A stretch of 64,000 nucleotides of DNA from Bugula neritina (lineage: Eukaryota > Animalia > Bryozoa): positions 11,406,818 through 11,470,817 of the forward strand of contig OZ037772.1 of the NCBI GenBank assembly GCA_964035545.1, given 5' to 3'. Numbering within the stretch: position 1 is the first letter of the stretch; the number at the start of each line of letters is the position of its first letter. The notes beneath the pieces are model-generated. The model worked only from the letters and a program-made list of their open reading frames with translations, searched no databases and was not told the DNA's origin. Below are positions 12,101 through 39,890 of the stretch, piece by piece. The position numbers and the translations under genes are program-made.

Positions 12101-15100
12101 TGTTGTGTTGGTGAGTTACTATTACTGCTGTCTCTGCCGCTGTTACTACTGCTGCCGTTACTTCTGCTGCTGCTGCTGTTTTTACCTCCTTTATGTTATA
12201 TACATATTATCAACATTAACATACTTGTGGTGTTGTTTAGTCTGAGCTCGAGGACTGTTCTGGTAATAACGGGGACGCAATAGACGCCCTCCTCAGCGAC
12301 AAGTATGCAGCAGATCAGATGAATTGCCGTCTGTATGATATCAGTGGAGGGCAGGTAACTCCTAACTTGTAGAATCTCAGTCTAGTGTTTTCATTAGGGG
12401 GGGGGGAGGGGCTAATTGGCGAGTTATAAGAGTTGGAAATTTTTATTGGGAGTTATAGCAGATTTAATTTAGTAGAAGAGATGTTTATAGTAGAGTAGTA
12501 ACTTTGTGTGTTGTACTTTTCACTGTCACCTTAGTTGCTGTGCACATGTGACCTCCCTGAAGGTTATGTAACTCTACCCTGTTTCCTGTTATCAAGGTGG
12601 TGACGGATCCCCTTCTCAAAGGCTCACAGCTCCTCACTGACTCCATCACCAGGCAGTGCTGTCAACTAGTTCATTTGGCATCCAAGATCCGTACGTTGAG
12701 TAAGTAAGTAGATACAACTAACCTAGTCCGAGTTTCCCACCAGTCTGTACGGGTCTCTGTGTTGACCAGCCTATAATATGTCTGTCTGCTTGTAGGGAAA
12801 GTGCCACATACGAAGATGTGGATGGCGAGCTGCAGTCACTGATACTGGATCATCTGCAGGAGTTTGAGGAGAGGAAGTGTCTTCTGCAGATTACCATGAG
12901 GCAACATGGCGTACACATTCGTGACCTCGCACCAGTACAAATATGGCCGCATCTCTGCCGTTATGTCATGTGCGAGCGAGAGAGGAAGGAACAGGAAGCA
13001 GAAAGCCGAGCCGAACCTCAGCCCGAGCAGCAATGCGTCAACTACAACGCAGCTGTTTGTGGCTGCTGCGGATCTGGTGGTGGTGGTCAGCCCGGCAGCG
13101 AGCAGCCCGTACAGATGTGCTGCCGCAGTCAACCGCCGCCAATTCCCACAGTGACTGTCACTCGCTGCTGTGTATGTGAGGAATCTCCCCGCACTGCGTG
13201 CACTGAAGGCATACCTGCGTGTCACGGAGCTGTCAACTGTCACAAGGTGGTTGATAGAACCTGTCAGACAGTGAAGTGCTGCAGCAGTAGAAGTCCAGTA
13301 CGCAACATGCAAACGTATATCTGTGAACACGCCCCTCTGACCTCAGCCAATCAGCAGGCTTCTAAGTGCTCCAAGTCGTCACTTCTCACTGTCTCACCTC
13401 TTCATTCTGTAAACATCTCTCCTACATCTCGCAGGCATCTCTGTAGCTCGTCTAGCTCCGCCTACCCGCCATCTTCCTGTCCTTCACCTTGTCCTCTGTC
13501 ACAAACTGTCTGTCAGGAGTCGTCTGCACATAACGGCAGTTGCAGTTCATCTGCAGAATCTCCCAACTGTCTAGACTACACGGAGCACTTGTGTGACCGG
13601 AACAGACACTTCTACAAACCCTGAAACTTTTCTCTTGTTGAGTTCTGAGTCTTCAGATGTTCTCTTGTCTATGAATAAAGTCTTGTTTTATTTTCAAAGC
13701 TGTCTCTGTTTTTGTAAAACAAAACTCTGACTCTCATCTTTATTATCGGCCATTTATTTTGTCAAGCTGAAAAACTCTCTCCTTTTCACTAAGAAATTTG
13801 CATTACTCTCCCCATCAGGCCTCAGGGAGATAATGTTTTACAGAGGTTTTCTGGAGCTTCCTAAAAGTTTTTATAGAAAGTCATTTTTACATTTGGAGTA
13901 TAAATAACTGAACTTTGGTTTTGAGTGCCGCTATTTTCTAACAAATCCTAACGCAAATATGACTATGTATGAGACTGTTGAGTGTAATGAGTGTCTGGTA
14001 TGGAATGAGAGTACAAGATATCCCGTGTATCAGAGTATTAGCATATTTCTATATATTTTATTCATTTAGATTTACTGTAATACATGTACTGTTTATATTA
14101 TGTAACATGTTATCTGCAACACTGTGACACAATCAACTAGTAGGACATCACACTAGAGCAAGACTGTTTCTCTGTATACTGGTTGTTCTCAAGACATGTG
14201 AAGATTTAGTAACACTGGCTCTAGTTAAAAAGCAAGCAACTGAATAATAACTTGAGGCTAATTAATTGTGCAATAACTGTTTAACTGGTAGTATAATCCT
14301 CACAGACTATTTATTACCAAGGTACATGTATGGAGGGTTTTGTGATTGAAATATGTATATCATTATGATTTCTTCACAGATGAATTCAGCCATACTTGAA
14401 TGCTGTGCAGAATGTAGTTGGTATCCTGTCACATGACGTAACGTTTTGTTGCAGACGGCTGACTGAAATAGAGAAGATGCTGACGGATGCAGAAGACAGA
14501 CAGCGACAGATCACTGATCAGGCTACGAGTGACAGTCACTCAAAGACTCATCAGATTCACCAGCTCAAGTCTGAGCAGCAGGAACTCAGAGTGAGTATTA
14601 TCAAACTCAGAGTGAGTATTATCAAACTCACAGTGAGTATTATCAAACTCACAGTGAGTATTATCAAACTCACAGTGAGTATTATCAAACTCACAGTGAG
14701 TATTATCAAACTCAGAGTGAGTATTATCAAACTCAGAGTGAGTATTATCAAACTCAGAGTGAGTAATATCAAATGAAATTCAAAATGTTATCAGACGTAT
14801 TAAAAAATTGCTATGTTTTTTTATCTGCTACCAAAACGCTGTCGTAAGAATTAGTTATTACGGGGATATATTATATATTATAATATTATTATATTATATT
14901 ATATATTATGGGCCTCTGATTAGAGATGTTGGTTCTAATTAGTTTATCAGCTGTAAATGTATTGTTGCTATATGCTTAGACGTCCCTTCTCAATGCTTAT
15001 ACATGTCTACTCAGTATTTATACATGTTACGCCTATTTACAGACACAGATACTCACTATTGAAGGAAAATGCAGTAGTTTAGAGGCTGAGTGCCGGGCTC

Positions 15101-22659: not shown

Positions 22660-23988
22660 TCATTTCTGCTGAAACCTCTCTATAAATTGGGTCACCAGGG
22701 TTAAAACTGCCACTATATAAAAAACTGTTTTTTTATTAATACAATTTAAATTCAAATATTTCTTAGAGCCATAGTGTTTTTCTGGCAAGGTGCTTTCAGA
22801 TAGAGCAATATTGGTCTCACTGCCATCTGCAAGAAATATATATAATAATTATGTTATACAACACGCTATTTAATACATTATATAATATACATAAAAAGAT
22901 ATTATTATATAAAGCATTTTGTTTACAAGAAACTAAAATACAGACATACCTGGAACTGTTGAGGCTGTAGAACTTTCACTTGAGAAATCATTTTCTGATG
23001 CCATATTAGCCAGATCTTGCTCCGTAATTCTTATAACTGATAATCAAATAATTATAATATAATAATAATAAATAATACAATATAATTTATTATAATATAA
23101 TACAATAGCATATTGTTATCTCATTTAAACAAATTTTCTGCAGAATACAGGCAAATAATTGCAAACAGTAGTTTGTGTTAAAATATGGGCTAAGGAGTTA
23201 TTCAGATGGGGTACAGGAGCAATGACAGGATGCTCTTTCTAACATCACCACTGGTCCATACTCATGGGGTTCAAACAAATGACTTAGTGTTGCTCTAACC
23301 TCTAGAGTCTAGACCATGGCTGCTCTTTATAAATATAAGGATATGACATATTATATAATATAATATACACAAATTATATGGTTATCTATAGAAGAAAAGA
23401 AAATACAGACACATACCTGGAACTGTTGTGGCTGTAGAGTTTTCACTTGAGAAATCATTTTCTGATGCCATAATAGCCAGATCTTGCTCCGTAATTCTTA
23501 TAACTGACAATCAAATAATTATAATATAATAATAATAATAAATAATACAATATAATTTATTATAATATATAACATAATAACATATTTTTTTATCTAAACA
23601 AATTTTATGCAGAATACAAGCAGATTGCTGCAAACAATAGTTTATATGTTAAAATAAAATAATTCCATAAAAAAGCAACATATATAGAATATAGATTATA
23701 GACAGTTGGCATTTTCAAGGTGTTTTACTTTGAGCCAAACTGGAACATTTCATGAAACTGCAAGTTGAAATATTTGCCCTGGATTTAAACTTGACTTGAA
23801 TATGACACAATATAACACTATGTCTATAGGATATCATATGATGTAATACTGATACAATTATATAATATAAGATTATATAGAGCATTTTGTACGCACAAAA
23901 AAATACAGACACATACCTGGAACTGATGTGGCTGTAGAAATTTCTCTGGAGAAATAATTTGCTGAAGCCATGTTAGTTGAATCTTGCT
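22660..23988 (-). CDS. 3' module of the caspase locus: three paralogous Ser/Thr-rich phase-1 exons and a terminal exon with a hydrophobic tail
   Basis: Exons 23988-23917 (QDSTNMASANYFSREISTATSVP), 23503-23417 (IRITEQDLAIMASENDFSSENSTATTVP), 23036-22950 (IRITEQDLANMASENDFSSESSTASTVP) and 22826-22660 (GSETNIALSESTLPEKHYGSKKYLNLNCINKKTVFYIVAVLTLVTQFIERFQQK*). Canonical AG/GT sites, open frames. Attachment to upstream exons is inferred. Confidence 0.65.
23205..23315 (-). mobile_element. tRNA-derived SINE copy (degenerate)
   Basis: Reverse complement matches the 32750-32930 copy (ACACTAAGTC...GAACCCC...GGTGATGTTAGAAAGAGCATCC...TTGCTCCT). Confidence 0.65.
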
Positions 23989-24909
23989 CTATAAATAGAA
24001 AAAGTTTCATTATGATTGGGCAAAATATTATAGTAATTTATATTTCATGTTTGTAACACTGACAGCAAATTTTTGATAGAAAGTGTGTAATGAGCAGTAA
24101 TATCCGCCCATGTTTATCCATTTTTATTTCAACTAAACATTCTAAGCTGTAATTATATTAAGCTAAAGGTTCTATTGACATTCATATTGATAATAATGCC
24201 ATCACTGAATTGACCATAACCATAAACAAAATTATTTAATAAAAATCATTCACTGAATTATTTTAATTTTATAAAATTTTTGAATTAGCAAGAAATTTTT
24301 AGTTCTGATGTTTTCTTTGGGAAGGGGGGGGGGAGGATTTTGAAGATAAATTTTAGAAATTCCTCAAGATCATGAGCTGAAATATGATACATAAGACAGT
24401 TTTTTGTATGCCTATTACTCATAACTATAACGTATAAAGTAAAAAGAAATTTAAATAGATAAAGCATCAAGTTTATTTTTATTAAGAGAAGAAATTTTAG
24501 AATTTGGATTATTTATGCAACAGTAAAATGAAATAAAATTTTAATATCAAATCTCAAATATAAAAACTGATATTAATATTAATAGTAATTGTAATAGTAA
24601 TATAGTAATACTATAAATTAAAATGTCATTCTGTAAAATACAATATATTAATCTTATACTTATAGTAATTATAGTTTTAGTATACTTCATTTCTAATTTT
24701 TAACATAATAACATCAATATGTATTTTATAAAGAAAAATCTTCCCATACTTTACAAGACTCTATATATACCTGATAGTGTAGTATGTCTTCACTGCAGGG
24801 TGGAAACTCTTTACTGTCTGAACTAGTAATAGTAAATGAACTGAGAAGAATTCCAGTAGAGATAATACACATTCTCTGACTGTAACACCAGCATTTATCT
24901 ACTTACAGT

Positions 24910-26698
24910 CAGGGATGTAGTGGTACCCATACGGTCCCATACGCCGTATGGCCTAGAAGAAAATAGGCTGTTCTTGGCCATACGCCCGTATGGGCATATA
25001 TTTTTTGAAAGTGTTACTGATTAGTGCACAGGATAGTTAGGGCATCCTCACTGAGAACATCATAAATTTCGCTCACAATCTAGTTTAAGTTCTTGTTATG
25101 TTAATGCTATGTGGGTGGCATGCGTGTTGCCTACTTGTGATTGTTTAGCCTGAGATTACACTATGAATAATAAGCAGCTATCAACATTCCATCTTCTCAT
25201 CTCTACGTATTCACTGAAGCGCGAAGTGCTGTGCATTAGTGATTACTAAGGAAAAAATATTTCATTTTCAGTGTATAAATCACTAATTTTTAGAAAATCT
25301 ATGAAGGCTATTGAAAAGATAAAAAAGTTTGCTATGCATAAATTTCTCAGGTTTTCGACAGTGTTTGTTTTATTCGAATACTATGCTTTCCTGCTGAGAT
25401 ATTTGGCAGGGATTGAAAAATAAACTTTTCAGGTAAAATTGGCCAAAATAGTAGATTTTTGTCTATAACCTTGCAAAAAAAATATTGAAAATTCGAAAAA
25501 TCAGGTGCTCTGAGGAGCAGGAAGATCTAAAACATAGTTTTTAAATTTTAACTCTAGCACAATTAAGTATGGTTTTATTTGGCGGGACTGAATTCTTATA
25601 ATATACCAATAATGTGGCCTCAGCAAGGCAGTGTCAGCTAGAAAGTTGCCATTATTTATCTTGTGTGGACTTGCATTTTGTCAATAAGCAATGAAATTTG
25701 GAAAAAAAACCAACATGAAATCCAGAAATAAAATCAAAATGTCTTCCGGAAACAGTACCAGGTGTGTAGGAGAGGTTAATGAAAATTTATCACTGAGGTC
25801 TACAGGTACTATATCCACATTTTGGTTGCGTTATTCCATGTTAATTATCAATGCAATGAGGTTTTGCAAACTGTACACCACCATAAGTAACCTTTTATGT
25901 TTGATTGTACTAACGTCTGGCTTTACATTTAATCATCTTAACTAGGTTAACACATATTGAACCTGTCAAATTTGTTCTTTTGGGTATATTTCCTTGATGT
26001 GTCTAGTGGAAGCTCAGGGGTTTTACTTTAAAACCAAGTTAACATACTCTTCTTTGGTGTGCTTTATTGTGTGCAAGGAGGTGCGGTGGTATCTCCTTAT
26101 GGATTAGACTAGTATACTCTAATAAACTCCAACTAGGTTTTCAACCAATTTCTGCTTGCCAATGAGTTATCAATTCAAATTGCTCTTTATAAATAACCAA
26201 CACACATTTTCTAATTTGCAATCTTCCTCTGTTCTGTTCTATAATTCTTTTTCTGTGCACGGCAGTGTATTAGATATTTGAAGTAATCAGGTTACATTTG
26301 GAGAGCACTTGTTACCTGTCTCTATCCTTCCATCTTTTTGAGATCTTCAGCAATTTTTCTGTACAGGTTGGACTTAGTGTCAATTGAGTAAGACTGCATT
26401 TAAAATTACAGTCAACAGGTATGGGACAATACTGAATATTTATATAGTTTGCAGCAATGCCCAGTCGTCATGTAGCTGGTATGGTATGAAAATAATAGTG
26501 AGGTGCACATTTCAACACAGATTTTTTTCAGAAGAATTAGAATTCACAATGGCTTTAAATTGCATAAATTTGCATCAGAAGCGCTCTGAGGGCTTCGGCG
26601 GCCGGGGCGCTGCCCCGGACCCCGCCGGGGGCCTAGGCGGCCCCCTGGACCCCCGGCCTGAGAGTATGGCCAAGAATATTTTTGCCACTACATCCCTG
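24910..26698. mobile_element. Non-autonomous hAT DNA transposon, 1789 bp
   Basis: Perfect 14-bp TIRs CAGGGATGTAGTGG / CCACTACATCCCTG; perfect 8-bp TSD CTTACAGT at 24902-24909 and 26699-26706; GC-rich subterminal hairpins at 26580-26660; no intact transposase ORF. Confidence 0.93.
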
Positions 26699-27009
26699 CT
26701 TACAGTATTATGTGATGTTTACAGTTGAGCTAGCAGAACAATGCATGCACTCTCAGGTGCACCATGTAATTATCTGAAACTGAGAACAAAGACTTCCAGA
26801 GAGGGTACGAATTCTGGAGACATTAAAGAGTAAGTGAAATGACAAGACAGATGTTAAAGGGTTCCTTCTCACTTAATTTTTTGTTCCTTTTATAAACCTA
26901 CAATACAACTGATAATTTAACAAAATAAGGTAAACTCAGATGTACCCTAAGTTGTATTATTATCTTCAGTTACTTAAGTTATGGAGTGCAAATACTGTCA
27001 ATGTAACAG

Positions 27010-27325
27010 CAGGTGAATGGTTTAATCCTCAGTAAAGGCCATTGGTATAATGTTAAGAAGGGCATTCAGTTACAATTGTTCCTGTACCACAATAGAATAT
27101 GAAAGGCCTTATAACCCTTTAGGGAACAGCCATGGTCTAGGGGTTAAAGCATTTACCTAGTAAGCACTAATTCATGGGTTCAAGCCCTGACAAAGGCCAT
27201 TGGTGATGTTAGGAAGAGGATTCAGTCATAATTGCTCTTGTGCCTCATTTAAACATAAGTCCTTAACTTGTGTTAACAAAAACCCTTTCTATCAGGGGTT
27301 TCTCACAGGGATAGTAACTATAAAC
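27010..27325 (+). mobile_element. Two adjacent tRNA-derived SINE copies (partial 27010-27100; fuller 27130-27325)
   Basis: B-box-like GGGTTCAAGCCC followed by AAAGGCCATTGGTGATGTTAGGAAGAGG and tail ATCAGGGGTTTCTCACAGGGATAGT, shared with 32750-32930. Confidence 0.7.
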
Positions 27326-27644
27326 TTGCGTGAGTGAGTTTTATAACTATTTTCCATGAGGGGTTCCAGCAGTGATATGGTGATTACAAAAATACTAAAA
27401 ATGATTGATTTTTCAAATTTTATACTTTGAAATTTTATTTATGAATAATAAATGTTATTGGTTCTGTAAATTAAACTCTGAAATATTCAAAAAATAGTGT
27501 TGGAATCGTATGATGTTAATTAAAGTCAAATTATGTTATTTTAAGCACCAACTAGCAACTAGACATGTTAAGTTTACACTGTCACTATCAAATGCTTATA
27601 CATGTTTGCCAAAACATGAGAAAATTCTGGATAGGAAAATAATA

Positions 27645-27775
<131 letters not shown>

Positions 27776-27804
27776 TTATATCAAGAAAAAGAGCAATGTT
27801 ATTT

Positions 27805-27855
27805 TATTGTGCTACTATTAGTTTCATGCCTCTTCAGCACTCCTCAGGCACAATA
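27805..27855 (-). ncRNA. Type I minimal hammerhead ribozyme in a terminal-repeat fragment of a second Penelope-like family (fragment about 27773-28063)
   Basis: Minus strand: ATTGTGC-CTGAGGA-GTGC(TGAAGAG)GCAT-GAAAC-TAATA-GTA-GCACAAT. Complete catalytic core, stems I and II, GUA cleavage triplet. Confidence 0.85.
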
Positions 27856-28077
27856 TTGAATTCAATTTTTGAAATTAGGAAAATCAACATGCTAAACACA
27901 ACGTAAAACATAATAGTGGCTTTGGTGTTATAGTAAAATATTAAAATCAAACAGTAAATTGTGTAAATAGTAACACTTTGTCCTTGCTAGAGATGGCAGC
28001 ATTTATTAAACAGTTGGAAAATATAATAATTTGAGCACTCTTTTATCTGCTGTTTAACAAACTCACACACACACACA

Positions 28078-28154
<77 letters not shown>

Positions 28155-28186
28155 AGTAATGAACGATAAAATTTGATTTAAAACAC

Positions 28187-28237
28187 TTTATTACTACTAG
28201 TTTCATGTGCATAGAATGTACACAATCATCAGATAAA
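28187..28237 (-). ncRNA. Hammerhead ribozyme, inverted pseudo-LTR copy
   Basis: Minus strand: TTTAT-CTGATGA-TTGTGTACATTCTATGCACAT-GAAAC-TAGTA-GTA-ATAAA. Confidence 0.85.
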
Positions 28238-28368
28238 ATGTTAAGATGTAATGTAACAAGAATAAAAACATACTATATATATGTATGAGAAATGTGTGTA
28301 AAAGCTATAAAGCCAATGGATTAAAATACATAAATTATAGATGGAATAAAAGTGATTAAGAGATTAAA

Positions 28369-30381
28369 ATGTCAAGTCACAAGTCAAGTCAAGTCAGAAG
28401 AATGAGATGGCGTGCATACTTCTTTCTTAACCCTGAAGCAAAAACTTATCAGAAAGAGACATACGGATTCAAATCTAACAAGACTCCACCGCAGATCCCC
28501 CAACTCCTAAGATTTGAAAAACGCATGTCTACTTTAATCCACAGACTGAATTTCAGAAAAGTCACATGCAGCTTTCAACAGAAGTTGCACAACGACATAA
28601 AGAAGAAGATAATTCCAGCCAACGTCATTGTACCAGCAGACAAAACATCAAACTATTATGAGCTGAGCTGCAATACCTACAATGAAATGCTTTACAACAA
28701 CATAACAAAATGCTACAAAAAAGAAGACAAGAACACACCCTTAACCATTTCCAGAGAAGACAAAAATATAGCAACTGGCTTACACTTAGCTGACAGGATC
28801 AACTGCACGAACCAGAAACCAGCCTACATCACACTAAAAGATCATAAAAACAACTTTGAAACTACCCCAACCTGCAGACTAATAAATCCATCCAAGCCAG
28901 AAATAGGGAAGATAAGTAAGCATATACTTGACAAAATCAACTCCGAAATCACTAAAGAATTAAATTTGAACCAATGGAAAAATACCAACTCAGTACTTAA
29001 CTGGTTTAACAACATAAAGAACAAAAAAAGCCACGCTTTTATTGAGTTTGACATCGTTGACTTTTACCCATCCATCACATCCGACTTACTAAGTAAAGCA
29101 TTGGAATTTGCATCTCTTCATGTACAAATAACACACGAAGAGCGGCAAATTATTATGCATACAAAAAAGTCACTTCTATACAACAAAGGTGAAGTGTGGA
29201 GCAAAACTACATCGGATCAGCTATTTGATGGAGCAGAGACCTGCGAACTGGTCGGCACATTTCTCTTGTACCATGTGACCAGCAAGCATGGCCCCAATTT
29301 TGGTTTATACCGAGATGATGGTTTAGGTGTCTTGACATCTTCAGCTAGAACCATCGAGGCCACAAAGAAGGACATATGCCACATTTTCAAGCAATATGGA
29401 TTAAAAATCACAATTGAGGCAAATAAAAAAACAGTAAACTTTTTAGATATCCACCTCAACCTCACAAACGAGATATACCAACCATACAACAAGCCAAACA
29501 ATATCCCCACATATGTTCATGCAAAATCCAACCACCCACCATCTATTATTCACAACATCCCAGAATCCATAAACAGACGACTCTCATCCATCTCATCCAA
29601 CTCCACCACATTCAACAACAACACAGCAATCTACCAACAAGCACTCATTAAAAGCGGATACAATCATAAGCTAAATTTTTACACGCCAACAGAGGTCACA
29701 AAGAAACCAAATCGTAGAAGAAAGGTAACATGGTTTAACCCTCCCTTTAGTATAAACGTAACTAATAACATTGGAAAAGAGTTTATCAAAATCATCAGCG
29801 AAGAGTTTCCTCCAAGCCATGAACTCTACAGAATTTTTAATAAGAAAACATTAAAAGTGTCATATAGCTGCATGCCCAACATAGCAGCAATCATAAATGG
29901 TCACAATAAGAAAGTATTGAAATCAGAAGAACATGAACACCACACAAAGCCATGTAACTGCAAATCTAAAAACAATTGCCCACTGAGTGGCCAGTGCTGC
30001 ACTGAGGCTGTCGTTTACCAGGCAACAGTCACAAACAACAACAACACAGCAGTAGAGACATACGTGGGACTAACCCAGAACCAGTTCAAGTATCGATACA
30101 ATAACCACACAGCCAGCTTCAAGAACACCAGTAAACAAAACTCCACCGAGCTGAGCAAATATATTTGGAAATTAAAGAACAACAATATAGCTTATGAGAT
30201 AAAGTGGAAAATTCTAGCCAGAGCACAACCATGCAACAAGCAGTCACCACTCTGCAAGCTATGCCTGCTAGAAAAATACTTTATAATCTGCAAGCCACAT
30301 TTATCCTCACTCAACAGCCGTAATGAGATAATAACAACATGCAGGCACGCTAGAAAGCTCCTCCTAGAGAATGTGACTTGA
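28369..30381 (+). CDS. Penelope-like reverse transcriptase with C-terminal GIY-YIG endonuclease (670 aa), probably defective
   Basis: Motifs PADKT, CRLINPSK, FDIVDFYPSI, DGAETCELVG, GLYRDDGL, VNFLD, WFNPPFS, CNCK-x4-CPL, VVY..YVGLT..FKYRY.NH, CKLCLLEK, LNSR.E..CRH. Apparent 7-codon deletion in RT motif B' and N-terminal truncation. Confidence 0.93.
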   Translation: MSSHKSSQVRRMRWRAYFFLNPEAKTYQKETYGFKSNKTPPQIPQLLRFEKRMSTLIHRLNFRKVTCSFQQKLHNDIKKKIIPANVIVPADKTSNYYELSCNTYNEMLYNNITKCYKKEDKNTPLTISREDKNIATGLHLADRINCTNQKPAYITLKDHKNNFETTPTCRLINPSKPEIGKISKHILDKINSEITKELNLNQWKNTNSVLNWFNNIKNKKSHAFIEFDIVDFYPSITSDLLSKALEFASLHVQITHEERQIIMHTKKSLLYNKGEVWSKTTSDQLFDGAETCELVGTFLLYHVTSKHGPNFGLYRDDGLGVLTSSARTIEATKKDICHIFKQYGLKITIEANKKTVNFLDIHLNLTNEIYQPYNKPNNIPTYVHAKSNHPPSIIHNIPESINRRLSSISSNSTTFNNNTAIYQQALIKSGYNHKLNFYTPTEVTKKPNRRRKVTWFNPPFSINVTNNIGKEFIKIISEEFPPSHELYRIFNKKTLKVSYSCMPNIAAIINGHNKKVLKSEEHEHHTKPCNCKSKNNCPLSGQCCTEAVVYQATVTNNNNTAVETYVGLTQNQFKYRYNNHTASFKNTSKQNSTELSKYIWKLKNNNIAYEIKWKILARAQPCNKQSPLCKLCLLEKYFIICKPHLSSLNSRNEIITTCRHARKLLLENVT

Positions 30382-30511
30382 CATTTTAATCTCTTAATCA
30401 CTTTTATTCCATCTATTTATGTATTTTAATCCATTGGCTTTATAGCTTTTACACACATTTCTCATACATATATATAGTATGTTTTTATTCTTGTTACATT
30501 ACATCTTAACA

Positions 30512-30563
30512 TTTTATCTGATGATGGTGTACATTCTATGCACATGAAACTAGTAGTAATAAA
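30512..30563 (+). ncRNA. Hammerhead ribozyme in the 3' pseudo-LTR of the Penelope-like element
   Basis: TTTAT-CTGATGA(30518-30524)-stem II GTGTA/TGCAC-GAAAC(30546-30550)-TAGTA-GTA-ATAAA; palindromic minimal stem III typical of PLE hammerheads. Confidence 0.88.
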
Positions 30564-30654
30564 GTGTTTTAAATCAAATTTTATCGTTCATTACTTTTAT
30601 TTATTTACTCTGCTCTGCACTGCATTGAGCTCTCTTTAGTGGTAAACTATACAC

Positions 30655-30723
<69 letters not shown>

Positions 30724-30851
30724 TATAACAAAGTCAAATTTGGTGCACACTTCTATATGAGCATATAGTATAGTCTTGGCAAATTTTACTGTTGCATTTT
30801 GAGTTTTAGTTTTAATATAAGTAAACGTGTCAGAATATTTTAAAAACCTTA

Positions 30852-33800
30852 TTATAACAAAACACATCTACTTCGTTCAGCAGAATTCAACTTTTCTTTT
30901 GAAGCCTTACTTTCTTCATTGTCCTGTATATCGTTTTGACCTTTGATCCCAAGTTTTCTGCTCATTGTGGTGTACATTGTCGTACCAGTATAGACATGTT
31001 CATTATATTCTGACATGACATTTTCAAACACCTGGTTTAGGTCAACACCTTTATACATCTTAGATACGACGTCAGATACCAACGGCCGAGGCGACTTGGA
31101 TACCAGAATTAGAATGTCTCTCTCAGCTGCACTGGCTTCTTCTCCTTCAACTGACTTTTTTTCATAAAGAACTGGGAAATGCTGCGTGATTAGGTTGTCG
31201 TTTTGAATAACAAACACCTGGGGAATATTTTCAATGATGTAAGTTTCAGAAAATTTTTGAACACATAGTAGGCTTGAGAGCAAACTTGTATCAAACATTT
31301 TCTACAGCAAGTCAAAGTGAAGTCAATTACTAAAAAACCAGTAACAATTGACGTCTAACTGACTGAGACTCTAAAATACTTCTGTTGAATCAAAGATGAC
31401 CTGTTCAATATTGAAAGTTTAGTCATATAAGCGAAGAAAATCAGAGTTAATTATTACTTTGTAAGAACATTTCTTTTAGTTTTAAAAACCTGCTTTACTA
31501 GTTAATAGTTTAGTATAAGAAATGGAGTATGCAATACCAAACTTGGACAAAATTATAATTTTATGAACGATAAATGAGAGATTATAGGGACTGCAAGCAT
31601 AGATTAATATGAAAATCTGCATCTAAATTTTTTTCACCTATATATAATATTTATACTGCATCATATTAAAAAGTTAAATCTGTTCCAAATTAATAGAAAT
31701 TTAAGTTTCTTTGTTTTAACACCTAATATTTTGTTAAACAATTGGCTATAATGATTAGTAATATGTGGAAAAAAGAAATGCAATTGCTCACTTTAGGCTT
31801 GTCCTTGAGATTCTGAAGCTGTGCTAGTTTTACCAGAAACGTCTCAACGAGGCCATCTTCTTGCTTTTTGACATCTTTGACCAGCACCAGAGTTCCTGTC
31901 AGCTCTTCCTGGTTGTCCAAGTCTTTCAGCACAGTTTCTAATGTTTTACTGCTTGGATTTTCGTAAACTGTTGGTATCAAGTTCATTTTCTCTAAACTTT
32001 CAACAATCTTTTCATTTTCGTCATTGTCTCCCTCGGAGCAGGTGAAGTGAAGTAGGAGAATGTTGAATGTCCCCCAGTCGACCCAAGATACTAAAATGTA
32101 TAAACATAATACAGTAACAGTTGAGTATCTTCTCCCTGTTCTAAGTTACGGCATTGCTTTATATATTATCTAAACTTATGTTGCTTGATTTGGAGCGAGA
32201 GTATTGAAACCGCAACCAGTGTTGGTTAAAAGCAAGTATGTTTTCAAAATTGTTCTATTTGCAAAAAAATCATATGCAGAACTTTGAGCACTAATCAACT
32301 TGTTGGTGAGGTCATAAAACTATGAGCAAAGTATTACTGAAGACAGATATTATTACATTTAAAAGTAGCAAATATATTAAATATAAAAGGGAAAAAATTT
32401 ACATGTAGCGAATAAAGATCAAGCCGTGGGAGAGCGTTGTGAGACAATCTCAGTGATTTTATATTGCAAATGGTTACTCCATATTGTGACTAGATTGTCA
32501 TATTGCTATTAATTTTTGTTTATATCCATGCAAGCACTCTATAGATCTTTAGTGAAGCATAAAATGCGTGGTTTTAGTAATTCAGTCAAAGGCAATCATT
32601 TAAGGAGCAGCAATTTTTATTGATACTTATTTTGGTCAACGCTATTATAGAATTGTCCAGTATCACTTCAGTTGCTGGCTGTCAAGTGAACTGTAATTTA
32701 CTAGCACTCACAAATCACTCACTACTTTTTAAAGCAAGCAATATCTCATCTAATCTAGGGGTTAGAGTGTTTGGATTAGTAAACACTAAGTCGTGGGTTC
32801 GAACCCCAGTAAAGGCCATTGGTGATGTTAAAAAGAGCATCCAGGCATAATTGCTCCTAGGTCACATATGAACAAGCTTCATTTGACAAAAATGCCTTTT
32901 ATCAGGGGTTCTCACAGGGATAGTGAGTTAAATACAATCATTTAGCAGCTAGTGTTATATACTGAGTGCATTACAGAATACACTCCAGAGTTGCATGTTG
33001 TGAGATGTAGACTAACCATTACTAAGAGAAGATATAGTTCCAGATGTTTGAGTGGTTGCACGGCTGCTAAGGGGTGCTAAAACACATTCAGAATAAAGTT
33101 AACAGTCAATCAGGACATTAAAGTTGTTTGCAGAAATGAGAATATTTTTATGAGCACTCCATGACATAGAAGTTGATTTCATTGTTGGGCTAAGAGCAGT
33201 AGACTATATTACATTGAAGAAATGCTCTCCTACACATGTATAGTGAAGACAAATCATATTATTGTTTCTTTGAAAAGGCAAATTTATCAGTATTGAAGCC
33301 ATCTCGATTCTTAAGCAAAGATTTACTGTTAAAATATACAGCTAGACAGGCAAGCAGATGGACAGCTCAAAAGCCTATCACGGCTTGTATAATTAATTTG
33401 AGCTAAATCTTGCTGTAAAATGTTAAGTGGCTTGTAGATCTTTACTGACCAGCCATGTGGTCTGATGCATGTTTAGGCAGGTAAATTGCTGCAGCTGATA
33501 TATAATAATTAGATATGTTCAAGAGCCAAATATATTTTTTAATGAAAACGTAAGAATCAAATCTAAGTTATTATTTTAGTTGTTCTAGTTATGAGAATAA
33601 CTCCTAATTTTTTATTGATACTTATTTTGGTCAACGCTATTATAGAATTGTCCAGTATCACTTCAGTTGCTGGCTGTCAAGTGAACTGTAATTTACTAGC
33701 ACTCACAAAACACTCACTACCTTTTATAGCAAGCAACGAAATTAAACCTCCATGATATAAATTATATTATATTCAGATTTAGACTGTAAGATATATTTAA

Positions 33801-34153
33801 ATACTTTTACTCTGTTGATTATCATTTATAATAATATTATTATAAATGATAATCACCAGAGTAGAATAGGTTATTATGGGTATAGTTTCAGTGAATGCTA
33901 AGCCCATGCTGGTACACACAGGTTCCAACCTTACTATATAACAGCATGCCGTTTGGCTATCAAAATGCAAAAGTATTTAAATATATCTTACAGTCTAATT
34001 CTTCTGCTGGTGGGGTCCTTTCAGGTAGAGGCAAATTTATTTCGATTTCCTCTGCAAGCAATATATAATAAATAATATAAATTTATTAATAAATATTTAT
34101 AAATATATAATTGATTATATAAATTAATAAACAAATAAATAAATAAATAAATA

Positions 34154-34201
<48 letters not shown>

Positions 34202-34215
34202 ATATATATGTTATC

Positions 34216-34260
<45 letters not shown>

Positions 34261-35204
34261 ACATATTATTTTACCTAAAACTTCCTGCATATTATAGTAT
34301 TGTTGTAGACAGTAGTTTATGTTTTTAAAGCAATTTCGTAAAATAACTAACATATTGTGTTTTATTTTTAGCCAGCATTTGAAATATTTTCCCTGGATTC
34401 AAACTTTAACCTGACAAATAATAAATAGAAAATTATATTTGAAATATGATGTAATATACATAATGATAAGATATAATACACATAATGATAATATAAGATT
34501 ATTATATGGTACACAAAAAATAAAATACAGACGCAAACCTTGAACTGATGAGGCTATAGAACTTTCCCTGGAGAATTTTTTTTCTAATGCCATGTTAGTT
34601 GGCTCTCGCTCTATAGCTTTTAGAACTGATAAATCCAACAATCAAACCTGAAATTATAATAAGTTCAATGAAGTAAAACACAGAACCTAATTTTATTCAT
34701 ATTATATCCTATAGGAGTTCATGAAATAACTTTTTAGAATCTTGATTTTCAGTTCCGGCCAATATTTAAGTTGCAAATTTGCATAAACAATTGCAGGAGA
34801 GAAAAGTGATGTGGCATAAATAGCAAAACCAAACTGACATATATTAAAAGTTTATGCAAATTTAACTTTTTAATAAAATTGGTAAAAAACATGAAGTGGT
34901 TAGCTCTGTAAGTAGCAAGTCACACAATATAATAGTAAATACTATAAAATAGCATAAGTACTTCAATAGGTATAATATATTTGACTGAACGAGCTAAATA
35001 GAAACCTTATAGAAATTATGCAATTGATGTAGTAAAAAAAGCAATGAAAATAGCTTACAATTGTGATAATGTTACTTTAATATCAGATATATAACCAGCA
35101 TTCACCATATAGTTAGGAAATTATATTATATAGGCATGCTAGTATATTTGACATTAAGTTGATTAAACACTTCAATTAAAGTTGACGTATTACCTGATGA
35201 TGTG
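30852..35204 (-). CDS. Catalytically dead caspase-fold (pseudo-caspase) module with a Ser/Thr linker
   Basis: Exons 35204-35194 (11-nt microexon, tentative), 34625-34539, 33076-33017, 32090-31792, 31217-30852. Caspase landmarks in order: NILLL, VYENPSSKTLETVL, GTLVLVKD (SHG position), NLKDKPK|VFVIQND (PKxFxxQAC position), ERDILILVSKSP, DLNQVFENV, TTMSRKL. The phase-0 intron after PK is shared with the upstream active caspase. Confidence 0.7.
32612..33736. repeat. About 125-bp direct repeat pair (32612-32738 and 33607-33736) flanking exon 33076-33017
   Basis: TTTTTATTGATACTTATTTTGGTCAACGCTATTATAGAATTGTCCAG...CACTCACTAC near-identical in both places. Confidence 0.9.
32750..32930 (+). mobile_element. 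tRNA-derived SINE
   Basis: A-box-like TCTAGGGGTTAG, B-box GGGTTCGAACCC, body AAAGGCCATTGGTGATGTTAAAAAGAGCATCCAGGC; related copies elsewhere in the window. Confidence 0.75.
33780..33997. mobile_element. MITE with 29-bp TIRs and an internal AT-rich palindrome
   Basis: TAGACTGTAAGATATATTTAAATACTTTT / AAAAGTATTTAAATATATCTTACAGTCTA; TSD readable as TA or ATT; inner hairpin about 33808-33864. Confidence 0.85.
34080..34262. repeat. AT-rich microsatellites (AAAT)n/(TA)n
   Basis: Direct inspection. Confidence 0.9.
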
Positions 35205-35654
35205 CTAATAATAAAAGCATTAAATAGATTAGGTAATTAAATTTAACAAACAAATCAAGAAAGTTAAAAATAAACAGCGAGTTTAATTTTTTTATTTTTT
35301 GTACAGTACTTCCAATTTAATATTTATATTTATTTTAGTTTGAATTTAATATATTATATAAGCATAATATACATTATTTTAGGTTTGGTGCAAAACAATG
35401 CAGGGAATGCCTTTTAAATGTTCATTAAAGTTTTCTTATGTTATCAGCACCTCCTGAAAGAATAAATGCAATAGTGGAAATTTTAAAAAAAATGTGTGAA
35501 CAAGAAATTCTTTAAACCACTATAAAAATAAAAACTTGGTTAATTCTCTTTAAAATCATTATTATCATTTATTATATATTGCAGCTGATGCCGCAATTTA
35601 GGATGGAGTTTAGAATAGAGGGTAGATTATAGTCTAAGGTTAAATTAAGCGCAG

Positions 35655-36225
35655 AGTATAGGATAAAGCATTGAATAGAGTATAGGATAAAGTATAGAAT
35701 AGAGTATAGGATAAAGTATAGAATAGAGTATAGGATAAAGTATAGAATAGAGTATAGAATAGAGTGTAGAATAGAGTGCAGACTAGAGTATAGAATAGAG
35801 TATAGAAAAGAGTTAGAATAAAGTTAGGACAGTGGTGACAGAGGGAAGAACTAGGACAATGGTGGCAGAGGGAAGAGCTAGGATAGTGGGAGCACAGGTA
35901 AGAGCTAGGATAGTGGTGGCAGAGGTAAGAGAGAAGACAGTGGTGGCGCAGGTAAGAGTTAGGATAGTGGTAGCACAGGTAAGAGTTAAGATAGTGGTGA
36001 CAGAGGTAAGAGAGAAGACAGTGGTGGCACAGGTAAGAGTTAGGATAGTGGTAGCACAGGTAAGAGTTAGGATAGTGGTAGCACAGATAAGAGTTAGGAC
36101 AGTGGTGGCAGAGGTAAGAGAGAAGACAGTGGTAGCACAGGTAAAAGTTAGGACAGTGGTGGCACAGGTAAGAGTTAGGATAGTGGTGGCAGAGGTAAGA
36201 GAGAAGACAGTGGTGGCACAGGTAA
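35655..36225. repeat. Compound tandem array: 12/24-bp TATAGAATAGAG units, then a 21-bp minisatellite (GGTAAGAGTTAGGATAGTGGTGGCACA-like, about 19 copies)
   Basis: Direct inspection; explains the repetitive ORFs 35813-36268 and 35832-36263. Confidence 0.9.
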
Positions 36226-36587
36226 GGCGCCGGGTGCCATGCCGGAGGTCAGGGACCTTTTGATTCATGAGTAATTATTACTCATGCCTGTCGCCTATTG
36301 CCCAGTTCAGACGATTCTCATAAAACAAGCTTTGTCTGATTTTTGTTCTAGTGTTTTATATTATAAAAGTTTTAGCTTTTTATAAACAAATCTAAAAAAT
36401 GTTAGCACACCTAAACTTTTAATGATGTTGGTAAAAAATTAACAAATTAAAACCCAGATGAATCTAAAAACAAAAACTCAATATGTGATTAGGCTAACTC
36501 TAAACCCTCAAAAACAAAGCAATAATAAACAACTCTATATGGTGCTTTCAAACAAAACCTGTGTCAGCTAACTAGACCTAACATCTG

Positions 36588-39500
36588 CTACCCAGCATTT
36601 TGCATTCTCAGATAAATGTTTTTTAAGCATATTTTCTTTGTGCAGTTAGTACGTGCCCAAGGAGTCTGGTCAGACTCTCGTCTCATCTTTATTTCCAGCC
36701 TTATGAGCACATCCGACATGCTTTCATTGAACTTTAACTTTTTTAGAATCTTCCCTAGCTTAGGTATCATGTTATCACGGTAAGCTAATGTGCCGGGCTT
36801 GCACGCCATTAGAACGTAGAAGTTTGGTCCGGGAAAATCGATTGACTGTGGAGGACCCAAATCTGGTGCTTCTTTCAGTGCGTCTGCTGCAAGTGTGAGA
36901 GGCAGATCAGGTGATAATTAAGACAGCATAGGTGTGGCAGTTGGCCAAATATTGTTATTACTCCATTGTTTAAAATATATCATCATTAAAACAACATTTT
37001 TAAATAATTTTAATCCTGATATTTATATATAGGTTGTAGTTAACAAGCAAGTTACAGTAGGCTCTACTAAGTTACAATACGTTTCCTAGAATTTTGAGGA
37101 TTGAAATGCTATTATTTATTTTGATATGAATATCTTGGGCTTTTATTGTCTTACTAATATTTTGCACTAAATTTAACTTACCTCTGTGGTCATGATGAAA
37201 CCTGTTGAGAGATTTGTTGCAAGCTTGTACAAACAGCATCTAAAAGATAAATCTGAAAGTGTGAAAAACTTTGCTATGTTTCCATGATACTGATAATATG
37301 TTGCTATACTATGTTTCAATCCTGTTATTAGTTAATGTTTTTAAGCCTACAAAACATTGCATAGAACTCAACATTGAATGATTTGAGACTATATAGTAAA
37401 GTTAAGCTATTAATTAGTAATGCATGGACTTCTATTGTCAATAGAGGGGATTCCCCTCAAGTTTTTACATGAACATTTTATGTAAATATGACAATTTATA
37501 TAAGCAAATATTTGAGTAGAGCGAAGCACATTTATATGAGTCAAATATACAGTGCATTTATATATTGTATAGTATCATGATTTGAGTAGATGAATAAAGT
37601 ATTAATTAGTTTAGCATTAATGTTCAATATAATAATTGACTTAGGATTGATTTTTACGGATGGTTCAACACCATTCCTTTAGCTTTGTCATACTATGTAT
37701 AGTAGCTATTCAGATGTTAGCAAAATATTACTTGCAATATAATATATAGAATAAAATGATCAATGATGAAAACAGCTTTCAAAAAGACTTTGGTTGGTGT
37801 AGAATTGCACGGAAGATAGAAATTGGTAGCAAGTCTGCTGCTATAAATGTGTCACAATATATTAAAACAAAAGTGATGATGCATAAGTAGTGGAGACCTT
37901 CAAATGTGCTGTTTGCAAACCTATTAGGGCATTTTTTGGCAAGTTTATAGATTAAAAATATATAATTACATTTGCAATTTTTATTTCAACTTCTTACGCA
38001 ATTAAATAAATCAGAAGTTGTTTTAGCATGTTTCACTACCACAAGTCATTATAATATACACTTATAATATATTTATAGGAAATTATTATATAGTTATAAC
38101 ACGTACTTACATACATACGCTATTACTATACGCAGTGTAGAATAAGTTAGCATAAATAAAAATAAATTTGAGCTGCAAAGTTAAACTCTGCCATTAGGAT
38201 AACATAATTTACAAAACTATTCACTAAATAATCATATGGTATGTTGTTCTCTCACCTTTGGTAGCCCTGCAGGAATCGCCTCATTCATTTCTTTGAGAAT
38301 TTCATTATAATAAACCCTTTCACCCTGTTCTGTAAAGATGCTGTAGTTACTGCCATGGCACATCATGCAGACCAACATGGCTGATTTAAACCTTTTCTCT
38401 TCAGCTTTAGATATTGCTCTGAGGATGTTTGCTTTAGAATCAGCTCTACATTCAATGCTTTTAATTTTCAATTTTTTCAACCCACTGATTAAGGCCTCTC
38501 TTTCTTCCAACGCACCATCTCTCCCTTCCACAGCATAAATTACGAGGCAGTATGGTGCATCTGTCAAACAATAGCATCCGTCATTTGCCTGTCTTTGAGC
38601 CCATTTCAGAAAATTTCCTACTTGGCCATTTGCTAATACTTCAGCCGTCTTTCCTTCGCTATTCCTTAAGCCTAAAAACTCTTTAGTCTTGTTGGCTCCT
38701 GCACAAGTCACGATTCTTTTTGCCATTTTTAAATTTCCAAACTTTGCTGCTATGTGCAGTATTGTGTTTCTATCTCTGTCAATCATTTGCATGCAACTTG
38801 TCTGGGATATCACTGAAATCATAAGAGATGCTTGTAGTTAAAATTCCTCACAGTAAATAATCTTCAGTAACCTTCTATGTAATGGTGAAATCTTCAATAG
38901 CTAACAATGCTGCAGCTGTGTTAGTGTAATATTTGTTCAGATAGGTAAACTTTACTTTATACTTTCACTAAGACAACTGATTCTACACATTAATGCAGAA
39001 TACAAAACATTAAAACAGGATAATAATATAGCAATAGAATAGCTGTAGCAACAGCAGCAATTGAAAATGTTACTTGAACCCAAATTGAAATTATGTCATA
39101 TCCCATAAAAATATAACCACAGCAAAGCTTGTATACAGCACTATAGAATCATGGTTAACTCTAAATTTTGCAAACACTGTTAGAAGCTGCAGTTATTAAT
39201 GTTGAATGTCAACCACTTTATAGTATATATTGCAAAAAGCTATTTAGATAGATGAATTTTAAACATAAATGATACTTATAAACCCCTTTTCTTGCAACTG
39301 CTTCACCTAGGTGGCTAATAAACAAGCTACTGTTTGCAGACTGCAGAGTGTAATTCTACCTATAATAATAACAGTTTACCTTTCAGGTAAGTTTGCTCAT
39401 CCAGGATTCTGTCATGTAAGCTAGCAGTGATATTTGGGGCAAAATGCATCAGTAAACAGATCTTGTAAAAGTCAAGGTGTTGGTGCATAGCACTAGCATA

Positions 39501-39890
39501 CATAGTATGCATGACCAATAAGGCAGCGAATTTGATTTTTAGAGGGTGGTTGCATCTAACAGCCTGTAGATACATGCTTATACAGAACAGCAAAATATTA
39601 AAATTGTCTGAACACTTTGTTGGTATTAGCTCGACAGCGACATCTTTCCACAAGTCTTCTGCATTAAAAAAAGCTGCTAAATTCTCAGGTGTTGAGAGCT
39701 CTAAAGAATGTTTTCCTTGTTTATTTTTTCTTTTCAATAAAGAAAATTTGGTTTTCGTATCATAGAGCCTCAGTTCACCGAGTAGTTTTTTGTAGTCATC
39801 AGCTGCGAATAGGCTATGCAGGCTTTTTTCTTGACCTTCACCTTTAGCTCTACAATCCACGTTGTTATTTGACTCTCCATTAGACTGCAT
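36588..39890 (-). CDS. Ankyrin-repeat-containing caspase (peptidase C14A), about 474 aa if it ends at the first stop
   Basis: Exons 39890-39380, 38812-38256, 37239-37182, 36886-36588 are phase-consistent. Ankyrin motifs DRDRNTILHIAAKFGNLKMAKRIV and RNSEGKTAEVLA. p20: CLVI, RDGALEE, VCMMCHG (catalytic His), LPK|MLFVQACN (catalytic Cys). p10: NFYVLMACKPGTLAYR, QTP, TKKICL. Confidence 0.88.

What the first reader, a model, noticed from the sequence alone, without database searches (positions are those of the whole stretch)
22660..39890. Candidate new system: ankyrin-caspase fused to a dead caspase domain, with splice-selected soluble and membrane-anchored forms
Seen: 13 minus-strand exons join in one open frame (2637 nt, about 878 aa): 39890-39380, 38812-38256, 37239-37182, 36886-36592, 35204-35194, 34625-34539, 33076-33017, 32090-31792, 31217-30872, 23988-23917, 23503-23417, 23036-22950, 22826-22660. 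Domain order is ankyrin, active caspase (CHG, QAC), S/T linker, pseudo-caspase, S/T repeats, hydrophobic tail. Both caspase-domain exons have a weak GTAG donor at or just before an in-frame stop (36588, 30852), so about 474, 747 and 878-aa products are possible. Established: caspases work as dimers, and caspase-8 is regulated by its dead paralogue cFLIP encoded nearby. Inference: this is a single-chain protease/pseudoprotease pair with an ankyrin sensor in place of a death fold. Even as separate genes it would be an adjacent caspase/decoy pair.
Basis: partly seen in the sequence, partly recalled or inferred. Interest (0 to 1): 0.88.

Follow-up and report, generated by a model that had tools for sequence, protein, structure and literature searches.

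The report
Ankyrin caspase with prenylated dead partner
In this marine animal (probably the bryozoan Bugula), a cell-death protease gene is followed by a catalytically dead copy of its protease domain that ends in a lipid-anchor (CaaX) signal, so the dead copy probably controls the live enzyme at membranes; whether the two are made as one protein or two is unproven.

Summary
The 13 exons exist and join in frame. Domain 1 is an intact caspase with about one clear ankyrin repeat. Domain 2 is a dead caspase of the same family (first half: hhalign 95.6%; second half not significant), and its frame stays open in related copies.

The 878-aa membrane-spanning form is not supported. Exon 13 is a copy of a 60-nt linker exon that lost its donor, so its tail is read-through intron, and exons 10-13 are relics of a decayed tandem copy.

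Exon 31217-30852 ends in CVLL-stop, a CaaX prenylation signal kept in 4 of 5 copies. There is one more exon at 34051-33992.

Fusion is unresolved. A related copy joins cleanly, but the window's exon-4 donor scores below all 26 reference donors and a conserved ATTAAA follows its stop. Most likely products: a 474-aa caspase plus a 279-aa prenylated decoy; a 767-aa fusion has about 30% probability. No RNA data were available.

Precedents: flatworm ANK caspases, coral caspase-X, caspase-16, cFLIP. I found no paper on CaaX caspases. Earlier scan notes report ankyrin caspases and CaaX caspases elsewhere in this genome.

The parts
39380..39890 (-). Exon 1, start ATG; degenerate ankyrin-like region
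   Evidence: 75% identical exon in L052; weak ankyrin similarity, E 0.005
38256..38812 (-). Exon 2: one ankyrin repeat plus caspase large subunit; catalytic His codon 38357-38355; Arg179-equivalent codon at 38522
   Evidence: Pfam Ank E 7.5e-4; family profile hits caspase structures at 3e-11; 26 of 32 family members match PF00656; pN 0.12 vs pS 0.285; positions
37182..37239 (-). Exon 3: QAC motif, catalytic Cys codon starting at 37221
   Evidence: QAC kept in L052 and L056
36588..36886 (-). Exon 4: caspase small subunit with Arg341-equivalent (36779); own stop at 36590-36588; very weak phase-2 donor after 36592
   Evidence: pN 0.24 vs pS 0.435
36418..36423 (-). ATTAAA, candidate poly(A) signal for the 474-aa caspase transcript
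   Evidence: Present 163-170 nt after the stop in 3 of 3 copies; function inferred
36210..36296 (.). Conserved, single-copy, GC-rich structured non-coding element; candidate promoter of the decoy unit or RNA-processing element
   Evidence: Identical to L056 and nearly identical to L052 while flanks are about 70% alike; one copy in the genome; fold z -2.6 and -3.3; no Rfam match
35194..35204 (-). 11-nt micro-exon candidate (frame-restoring or 5' untranslated)
   Evidence: Best-scoring AG-GT pair of 640 in the interval; acceptor lost in L056, donors weak in L052 and L056
34539..34625 (-). 87-nt phase-1 Ser/Thr-rich exon; ATG at 34593 could start a separate 279-aa decoy
   Evidence: ATG kept in all six copies of this exon
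33992..34051 (-).
   Evidence: AG and GTAAGA sites, open frame; 60-nt counterparts in L056 and L058
33017..33076 (-). 60-nt phase-1 linker exon
   Evidence: 66 nt in L056 and 60 nt in L058, frame kept
31792..32090 (-). Pseudo-caspase large-subunit half; His-Gly and Arg179-equivalent lost
   Evidence: hhalign to the ANK-caspase family 95.6%, E 1.1e-8; score 53.9 against a maximum of 18.1 in 40 shuffles
30852..31217 (-). Pseudo-caspase terminal exon: QAC replaced, small-subunit-like region, CaaX box CVLL at 30866-30855, stop at 30854-30852
   Evidence: small-subunit similarity in register but not significant
28081..30717 (+). Mobile element, probably Penelope-like (670-aa ORF at 28369-30381 between inverted repeats), inserted in a TA run just after the CaaX stop
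   Evidence: 68 matches in the genome; feature matches to HTH_animal, GIY-YIG and RVT clusters; absent from colinear L058
22950..23988 (-). Three copies (72, 87, 87 nt) of the 87-nt linker exon; relic of a downstream tandem unit
   Evidence: DNA homology to 34625-34539; L057 and L056 carry this DNA in front of a pseudo-caspase exon
22660..22826 (-).

Best explanation
The locus is a tandemly duplicated unit of an ankyrin caspase and a membrane-targeted caspase decoy. In this copy it most likely makes two polypeptides. The first is a 474-aa Asp-directed initiator-type caspase that ends at 36588 and is polyadenylated after ATTAAA at 36423. The second is a roughly 279-aa dead caspase that starts in the 87-nt exon and ends in CVLL. 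Shown: the residues, open frames, motif conservation and duplication as a unit. Established knowledge: CaaX boxes ending in Leu are geranylgeranylated, and caspases are switched on by dimerisation. Inferred: the prenylated decoy sits on inner membranes and pairs with the active caspase, as cFLIP-L does with caspase-8, bringing it to the membrane and setting its activity or substrate choice, probably in immunity or regulated cell death. A minor fused transcript is not excluded.
For: Domain 1 keeps His, Cys and the three S1-pocket residues and is under purifying selection. Domain 2 derives from the same family, has lost the catalytic residues, yet has no stop between the window and the L056+L055 copy (neutral chance 0.23, 0.047 and 0.20 for the three parts, about 0.002 together). 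CVLL or CVVL plus stop occurs in 4 of 5 copies at 50-63% identity, against 0.11% of random stops; a 28%-identical ankyrin caspase on C3 ends CAVQ. For two products: the exon-4 donor scores -4.1 bits, below all 26 reference donors and at the 24th percentile of random GT; ATTAAA is kept in 3 of 3 copies; a conserved single-copy element follows it; the ATG of the 87-nt exon is kept in 6 of 6 copies with A at -3.
Against: No transcript was seen. The L056+L055 copy joins from exon 2 to the CaaX with a phase-1 donor of 5.8 bits and no micro-exon. The ATG-bearing exon is symmetric and a multiple of 3 long, as internal coding exons are. No strong 5'-untranslated-exon donor is conserved across copies downstream of the conserved element. 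Domain 2 shows pN close to pS, and copy L058 has lost the CaaX Cys while L057 has a premature stop, so constraint is loose. The second half of domain 2 is not a significant caspase match and half-domain models were low-confidence.
Confidence: 0.5

Rival explanations
1. One gene with a composite exon 4: polyadenylation after 36423 gives the soluble 474-aa caspase, and splicing 36592>35204>34625>34051>33076>32090>31217 gives a 767-aa single chain of ankyrin, caspase, linker, dead caspase and CaaX, whose two domains form an intramolecular pseudo-dimer on membranes.
For: The 767-aa frame is open. The L056+L055 copy fuses without a micro-exon. The micro-exon is the top-scoring candidate in the interval and has a strong donor exactly in the copy that needs it. 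Both domains duplicate together. A single-domain relative ends in CaaX while domain 1 here does not. Coral caspase-X and caspase-16 are precedents (PMC4715348, PMC12198278).
Against: The window donor is at -4.1 bits and the L052 donor at 0.5 bits; donor phase differs between copies; the micro-exon acceptor is lost in L056. Distant family members L067 and L069 show no such extension.
Confidence: 0.3
2. The downstream module is a young, decaying duplicate that is weakly expressed or no longer functional in this genome; only the 474-aa ankyrin caspase matters.
For: pN close to pS in exons 8-9 and the linkers; broken copies L057 and L058, and relics at 23988-22767 and on C8 about 37 kb beyond the window; a mobile element inserted 135 nt after the stop.
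Against: No nonsense change and only frame-keeping indels across copies that differ by 13-30%; splice sites and CaaX kept.
Confidence: 0.14
3. The first reader's three-isoform model, including an 878-aa form anchored by a hydrophobic tail through the splice 30872>23988.
For: The frame is open; the 30872 donor scores 3.6 bits and GT is present in L057 and L058; exons 10-12 keep good splice sites.
Against: The donor is absent in L054 and L055 and its GT comes from a Ser codon before the CaaX. The tail is intron behind a mutated donor, hydropathy 1.51, not conserved, with its stop in a repeat. Exons 10-13 are the linker of another unit.
Confidence: 0.06

Closest known systems
ANK caspases of parasitic flatworms and one annelid (PMC11463336)
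   Same: Ankyrin repeats in place of CARD or DED in front of an intact caspase domain
   Different: Bryozoans were not surveyed there. The prodomain here is reduced to about one clear repeat, and a dead CaaX-ending partner follows. Common descent with the flatworm clade was not tested.
Coral caspase-X (PMC4715348) and mammalian caspase-16 (PMC12198278)
   Same: Active and catalytically dead caspase domains side by side; the dead one lacks His and Cys and is proposed to pair with the active one
   Different: There the dead domain is N-terminal and one chain is shown by cDNA or gene structure. Here it is C-terminal, carries a CaaX box, sits behind an ankyrin caspase, and may be a separate polypeptide.
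cFLIP-L with caspase-8, and dipteran caspase-like decoys (as described in PMC12198278 and PMC3141678)
   Same: A dead paralogue made by duplication that can regulate the active caspase
   Different: No DED. Targeting would be by prenylation and not by a death-fold platform. No regulatory effect is shown here.
CaaX-prenylated proteins such as Cdc42, Rho and Rap (from my own knowledge)
   Same: Terminal C-aliphatic-aliphatic-Leu; the last residues match the CVLL end I recall for Cdc42
   Different: The carrier is a caspase fold; the upstream region is not strongly polybasic. My paper searches found no prenylated caspase.

Membership tests
Caspase (Peptidase C14A), domain 1 | Caspase-domain homology | tested here: met
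   Family profile matches caspase structures at 3e-11; 26 of 32 members match PF00656; single exons alone are below the cut-off
Caspase (Peptidase C14A), domain 1 | His-Gly and QAC dyad; Arg179, Gln283 and Arg341 pocket residues | tested here: met
   the motif reads QACNK, not QACRG
Caspase (Peptidase C14A), domain 1 | Asp-specific proteolytic activity | not testable with these tools
   Needs an assay
ANK caspase (flatworm type) | Ankyrin prodomain on the same chain as the caspase | tested here: met
   Repeat and large subunit share exon 2; paralogues have 500-830-aa ankyrin exons
ANK caspase (flatworm type) | Branches within the flatworm ANK-caspase clade | not tested
   No flatworm sequences were fetched
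Pseudo-caspase or decoy (cFLIP-like), domain 2 | Caspase homology, large-subunit half | tested here: met
Pseudo-caspase or decoy (cFLIP-like), domain 2 | Caspase homology or fold, small-subunit half | tested here: inconclusive
   hhalign E 0.04-0.14, within the shuffle range; model pLDDT 45
Pseudo-caspase or decoy (cFLIP-like), domain 2 | Catalytic His and Cys absent | tested here: met
   in all copies
Pseudo-caspase or decoy (cFLIP-like), domain 2 | Binds and regulates an active caspase | not testable with these tools
   Inferred only
cFLIP proper | Tandem DED prodomain | tested here: not met
   No death-fold match in the exons scanned; linker exons are short and Ser/Thr-rich
Double caspase (caspase-X, caspase-16) | Both domains on one transcript | tested here: inconclusive
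   No RNA run; splice-site evidence mixed
Double caspase (caspase-X, caspase-16) | Dead domain N-terminal to the active one | tested here: not met
   Order is reversed
CaaX-prenylated protein | C-a-a-X immediately before the stop, conserved | tested here: met
   4 of 5 copies; 0.11% by chance
CaaX-prenylated protein | Lipid attachment and membrane location | not testable with these tools
   Needs labelling and a Cys-to-Ser control
Tail-anchored membrane protein (878-aa form) | Conserved terminal hydrophobic helix encoded by a true exon | tested here: not met

The most novel reading that the evidence does not exclude
A single gene switches, by competition between polyadenylation and splicing at exon 4, between a soluble ankyrin caspase and a 767-aa self-dimerising ankyrin-caspase-pseudocaspase chain that is geranylgeranylated, giving an adaptor-free, lipid-anchored caspase with its regulator built in.
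Probability: 0.3. Interest if true: 0.72.

Novelty: new variant of a known kind. Interest (0 to 1): 0.52.

Why it matters
Caspases normally reach their activation site through CARD or DED adaptors. A caspase-fold protein with its own prenyl anchor would be another way to concentrate and dimerise caspases on membranes, and I found no paper describing one. It is directly testable with two short constructs and a Cys-to-Ser control. The locus also extends ankyrin caspases to a genome with at least 179 caspase-like matches, and shows a caspase/decoy unit being duplicated and lost repeatedly, as fast-evolving immune genes are.

Tried and rejected
Joined model: I did not search or fold it with any database tool; exons were searched by reference, and joins were made only inside local scripts to check frames and to compare with loci already fetched. 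Domain 2 could therefore be folded only in halves: pLDDT 54 and 45; the fold searches, run on the first half only, gave nothing usable. Profile searches of solved structures and the Atlas with domain 2 gave no caspase. A search for full-length relatives returned only generic ankyrin proteins. Both metagenome scans were blank. The conserved non-coding element matched no Rfam family; by eye it fits neither a hammerhead nor an HDV-like ribozyme. The donor scoring matrix rests on only 26 related sites, so the scores are rough.
Full report
Source. The window lies on contig C8 of a 216-Mb animal genome with at least 179 matches to the caspase family PF00656. I take it for the bryozoan Bugula. This rests on earlier scan notes and on the record prefix of the closest contigs, which I recall as the Bugula neritina mitochondrial accession. 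I did not verify the species.

The observation. All 13 intervals have AG/GT ends and join into 878 codons plus a stop. Closely related copies in two JGI samples (about 70-90% DNA identity; L052, L054-L059) keep exons 1-4 and 6-9 with the same phases. L056 and L055 overlap by 80 nt and give one continuous copy from exon 2 to the last exon. The gene unit is therefore real and has been duplicated several times. Fragments of both domains also lie together about 37 kb beyond the window end.

Domain 1. Exon 2 holds one ankyrin repeat (E 7.5e-4, below the Pfam cut-off) and a caspase large subunit. A profile of related exons matches solved caspases at 3e-11, and 26 of 32 relatives match PF00656. The His-Gly pair, the QAC Cys and the equivalents of Arg179, Gln283 and Arg341 are present, so Asp specificity is expected from established caspase knowledge. 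Exons 2 and 4 show purifying selection (pN/pS 0.12/0.285 and 0.24/0.435). In L052 and L056 the linker between subunits has no Asp, which suggests activation by dimerisation more than by cleavage; this is inference. Two paralogues on C3 and C9 have the same caspase exons behind ankyrin exons of 500-830 aa, so the ankyrin part here is much reduced.

Domain 2. The exon-8 profile matches the ankyrin-caspase large subunit at 95.6%, E 1.1e-8. Its score is 53.9 against at most 18.1 in 40 shuffles, and it is closer to this family than to the other caspases sampled from the genome. It shares the phase-0 intron after the PK motif with domain 1. His, Cys and the Arg179 equivalent are gone in all copies. 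The small-subunit half aligns in the expected register but not significantly, and half-domain models were too poor to test the fold. Amino acids change almost freely (pN close to pS), yet there is no stop between the window and L056+L055, which neutral drift would allow about 2 times in 1000, and indels keep the frame. It is best read as a translated, fast-evolving dead caspase.

The missed CaaX box. Read to its own stop, exon 9 ends CVLL. Homologues end CVLL, CVVL and CVLL (L054, L055, L057), and L058 ends SVLM at the same stop. L057 also has an earlier stop. Only 0.11% of random stops follow such a motif, though these copies are related and not independent. A 28%-identical ankyrin caspase on C3 ends CAVQ, which is independent support. 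Earlier scan notes report CaaX caspases elsewhere in the genome; I could not check those loci. The natural end of the unit is therefore 30852, with a likely geranylgeranyl anchor.

The membrane-spanning form fails. The GT at 30872 comes from a Ser codon and is missing in two of four homologues. Exons 10-12 are copies of the 87-nt linker exon. The hydrophobic tail is thus intron, peaks at 1.51 on a 19-residue hydropathy window, is not conserved, and stops inside a repeat. In L056 and L057 this same DNA precedes a pseudo-caspase exon, so 23988-22767 is the relic linker of a second unit. A probable Penelope-like element fills 28081-30717 and is absent from colinear L058.

One chain or two. For one chain: L056+L055 joins in frame through a phase-1 donor of 5.8 bits, all linker exons are symmetric, and the window's 11-nt micro-exon is the best of 640 AG-GT pairs in its interval and would restore the frame, giving 767 aa. 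For two chains: the window's exon-4 donor scores -4.1 bits, below all 26 reference donors; L052's scores 0.5; the micro-exon acceptor is lost in L056. ATTAAA follows the exon-4 stop in 3 of 3 copies. A single-copy 87-nt element, identical in L056, lies 130 nt further on. An ATG with A at -3 is kept in all six copies of the 87-nt exon and would give a 279-aa decoy. I put two products at 0.5, a real fused isoform at 0.3, a decaying module at 0.14 and the transmembrane model at 0.06. The joined model was not searched or folded with database tools; it was searched exon by exon.

Mechanism. Shown: an intact caspase and a dead, CaaX-ending paralogous domain, inherited and duplicated together. Inferred: the dead domain is prenylated, binds the active domain through the usual dimer face, and so places and tunes it at membranes. 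The direction of the effect is unknown. The coral dead domain dampens activity (PMC4715348), whereas cFLIP-L can activate caspase-8 (PMC12198278).

Comparison and verdict. Ankyrin caspases are described from parasitic flatworms and one annelid (PMC11463336). Single-chain dead/active pairs are described in corals and mammals, and separate decoys in Diptera (PMC3141678). What differs here is the reversed order and the CaaX anchor, for which three paper searches found no precedent (the library lacks most subscription journals). Earlier scan notes already describe an ankyrin-caspase family with dead half-domains in this genome. Verdict: a new variant of a known kind, interest 0.52.

Noticed in passing
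window 36210-36296: Single-copy GC-rich non-coding element, identical in L056 while flanks are about 70% alike; folds into several hairpins (z -3.3 on the plus strand), looks tRNA-like by eye, and runs into a 27-nt tandem repeat. Unexplained.
   Followed up: partly
window 28081-30717: Probable Penelope-like element with an intact 670-aa ORF, no Pfam match, inverted terminal repeats, inserted in a TA run; 68 matches in the genome, several over 90% identical.
   Followed up: partly
L043 8048-8371 (G000 C3, about 22.647 Mb): Ankyrin caspase with an 830-aa ankyrin exon whose catalytic domain ends CAVQ-stop, a farnesylation-type CaaX box on an active caspase.
   Followed up: partly
L046 (G000 C8, about 11.505-11.509 Mb): Scrambled fragments of exons 4, 8 and 9 of this unit lie side by side; relic of a third copy.
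   Followed up: partly
G000 whole genome: At least 179 caspase-like matches, clustered on C1 and C6; several read QACSG, HACSG or VACRSG at the catalytic motif.
   Followed up: no
L052 and L056, exons 3-4: The linker between caspase subunits has no Asp in these copies, so they cannot be cut there by a caspase.
   Followed up: no
L058 2597-2941 and L057 1820-2186: One related decoy copy has lost the CaaX Cys (SVLM) and another has a premature stop 22 codons before its CaaX-ending stop; anchored and unanchored decoys may coexist.
   Followed up: partly
window 7061-13624 (+): Several long ORFs (345, 266, 453, 268 aa); the three scanned had no significant Pfam match.
   Followed up: no
L066, L067, L069: Ankyrin caspases with the same exon plan in other public samples; the last exons seen in L067 and L069 do not end in CaaX.
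   Followed up: partly
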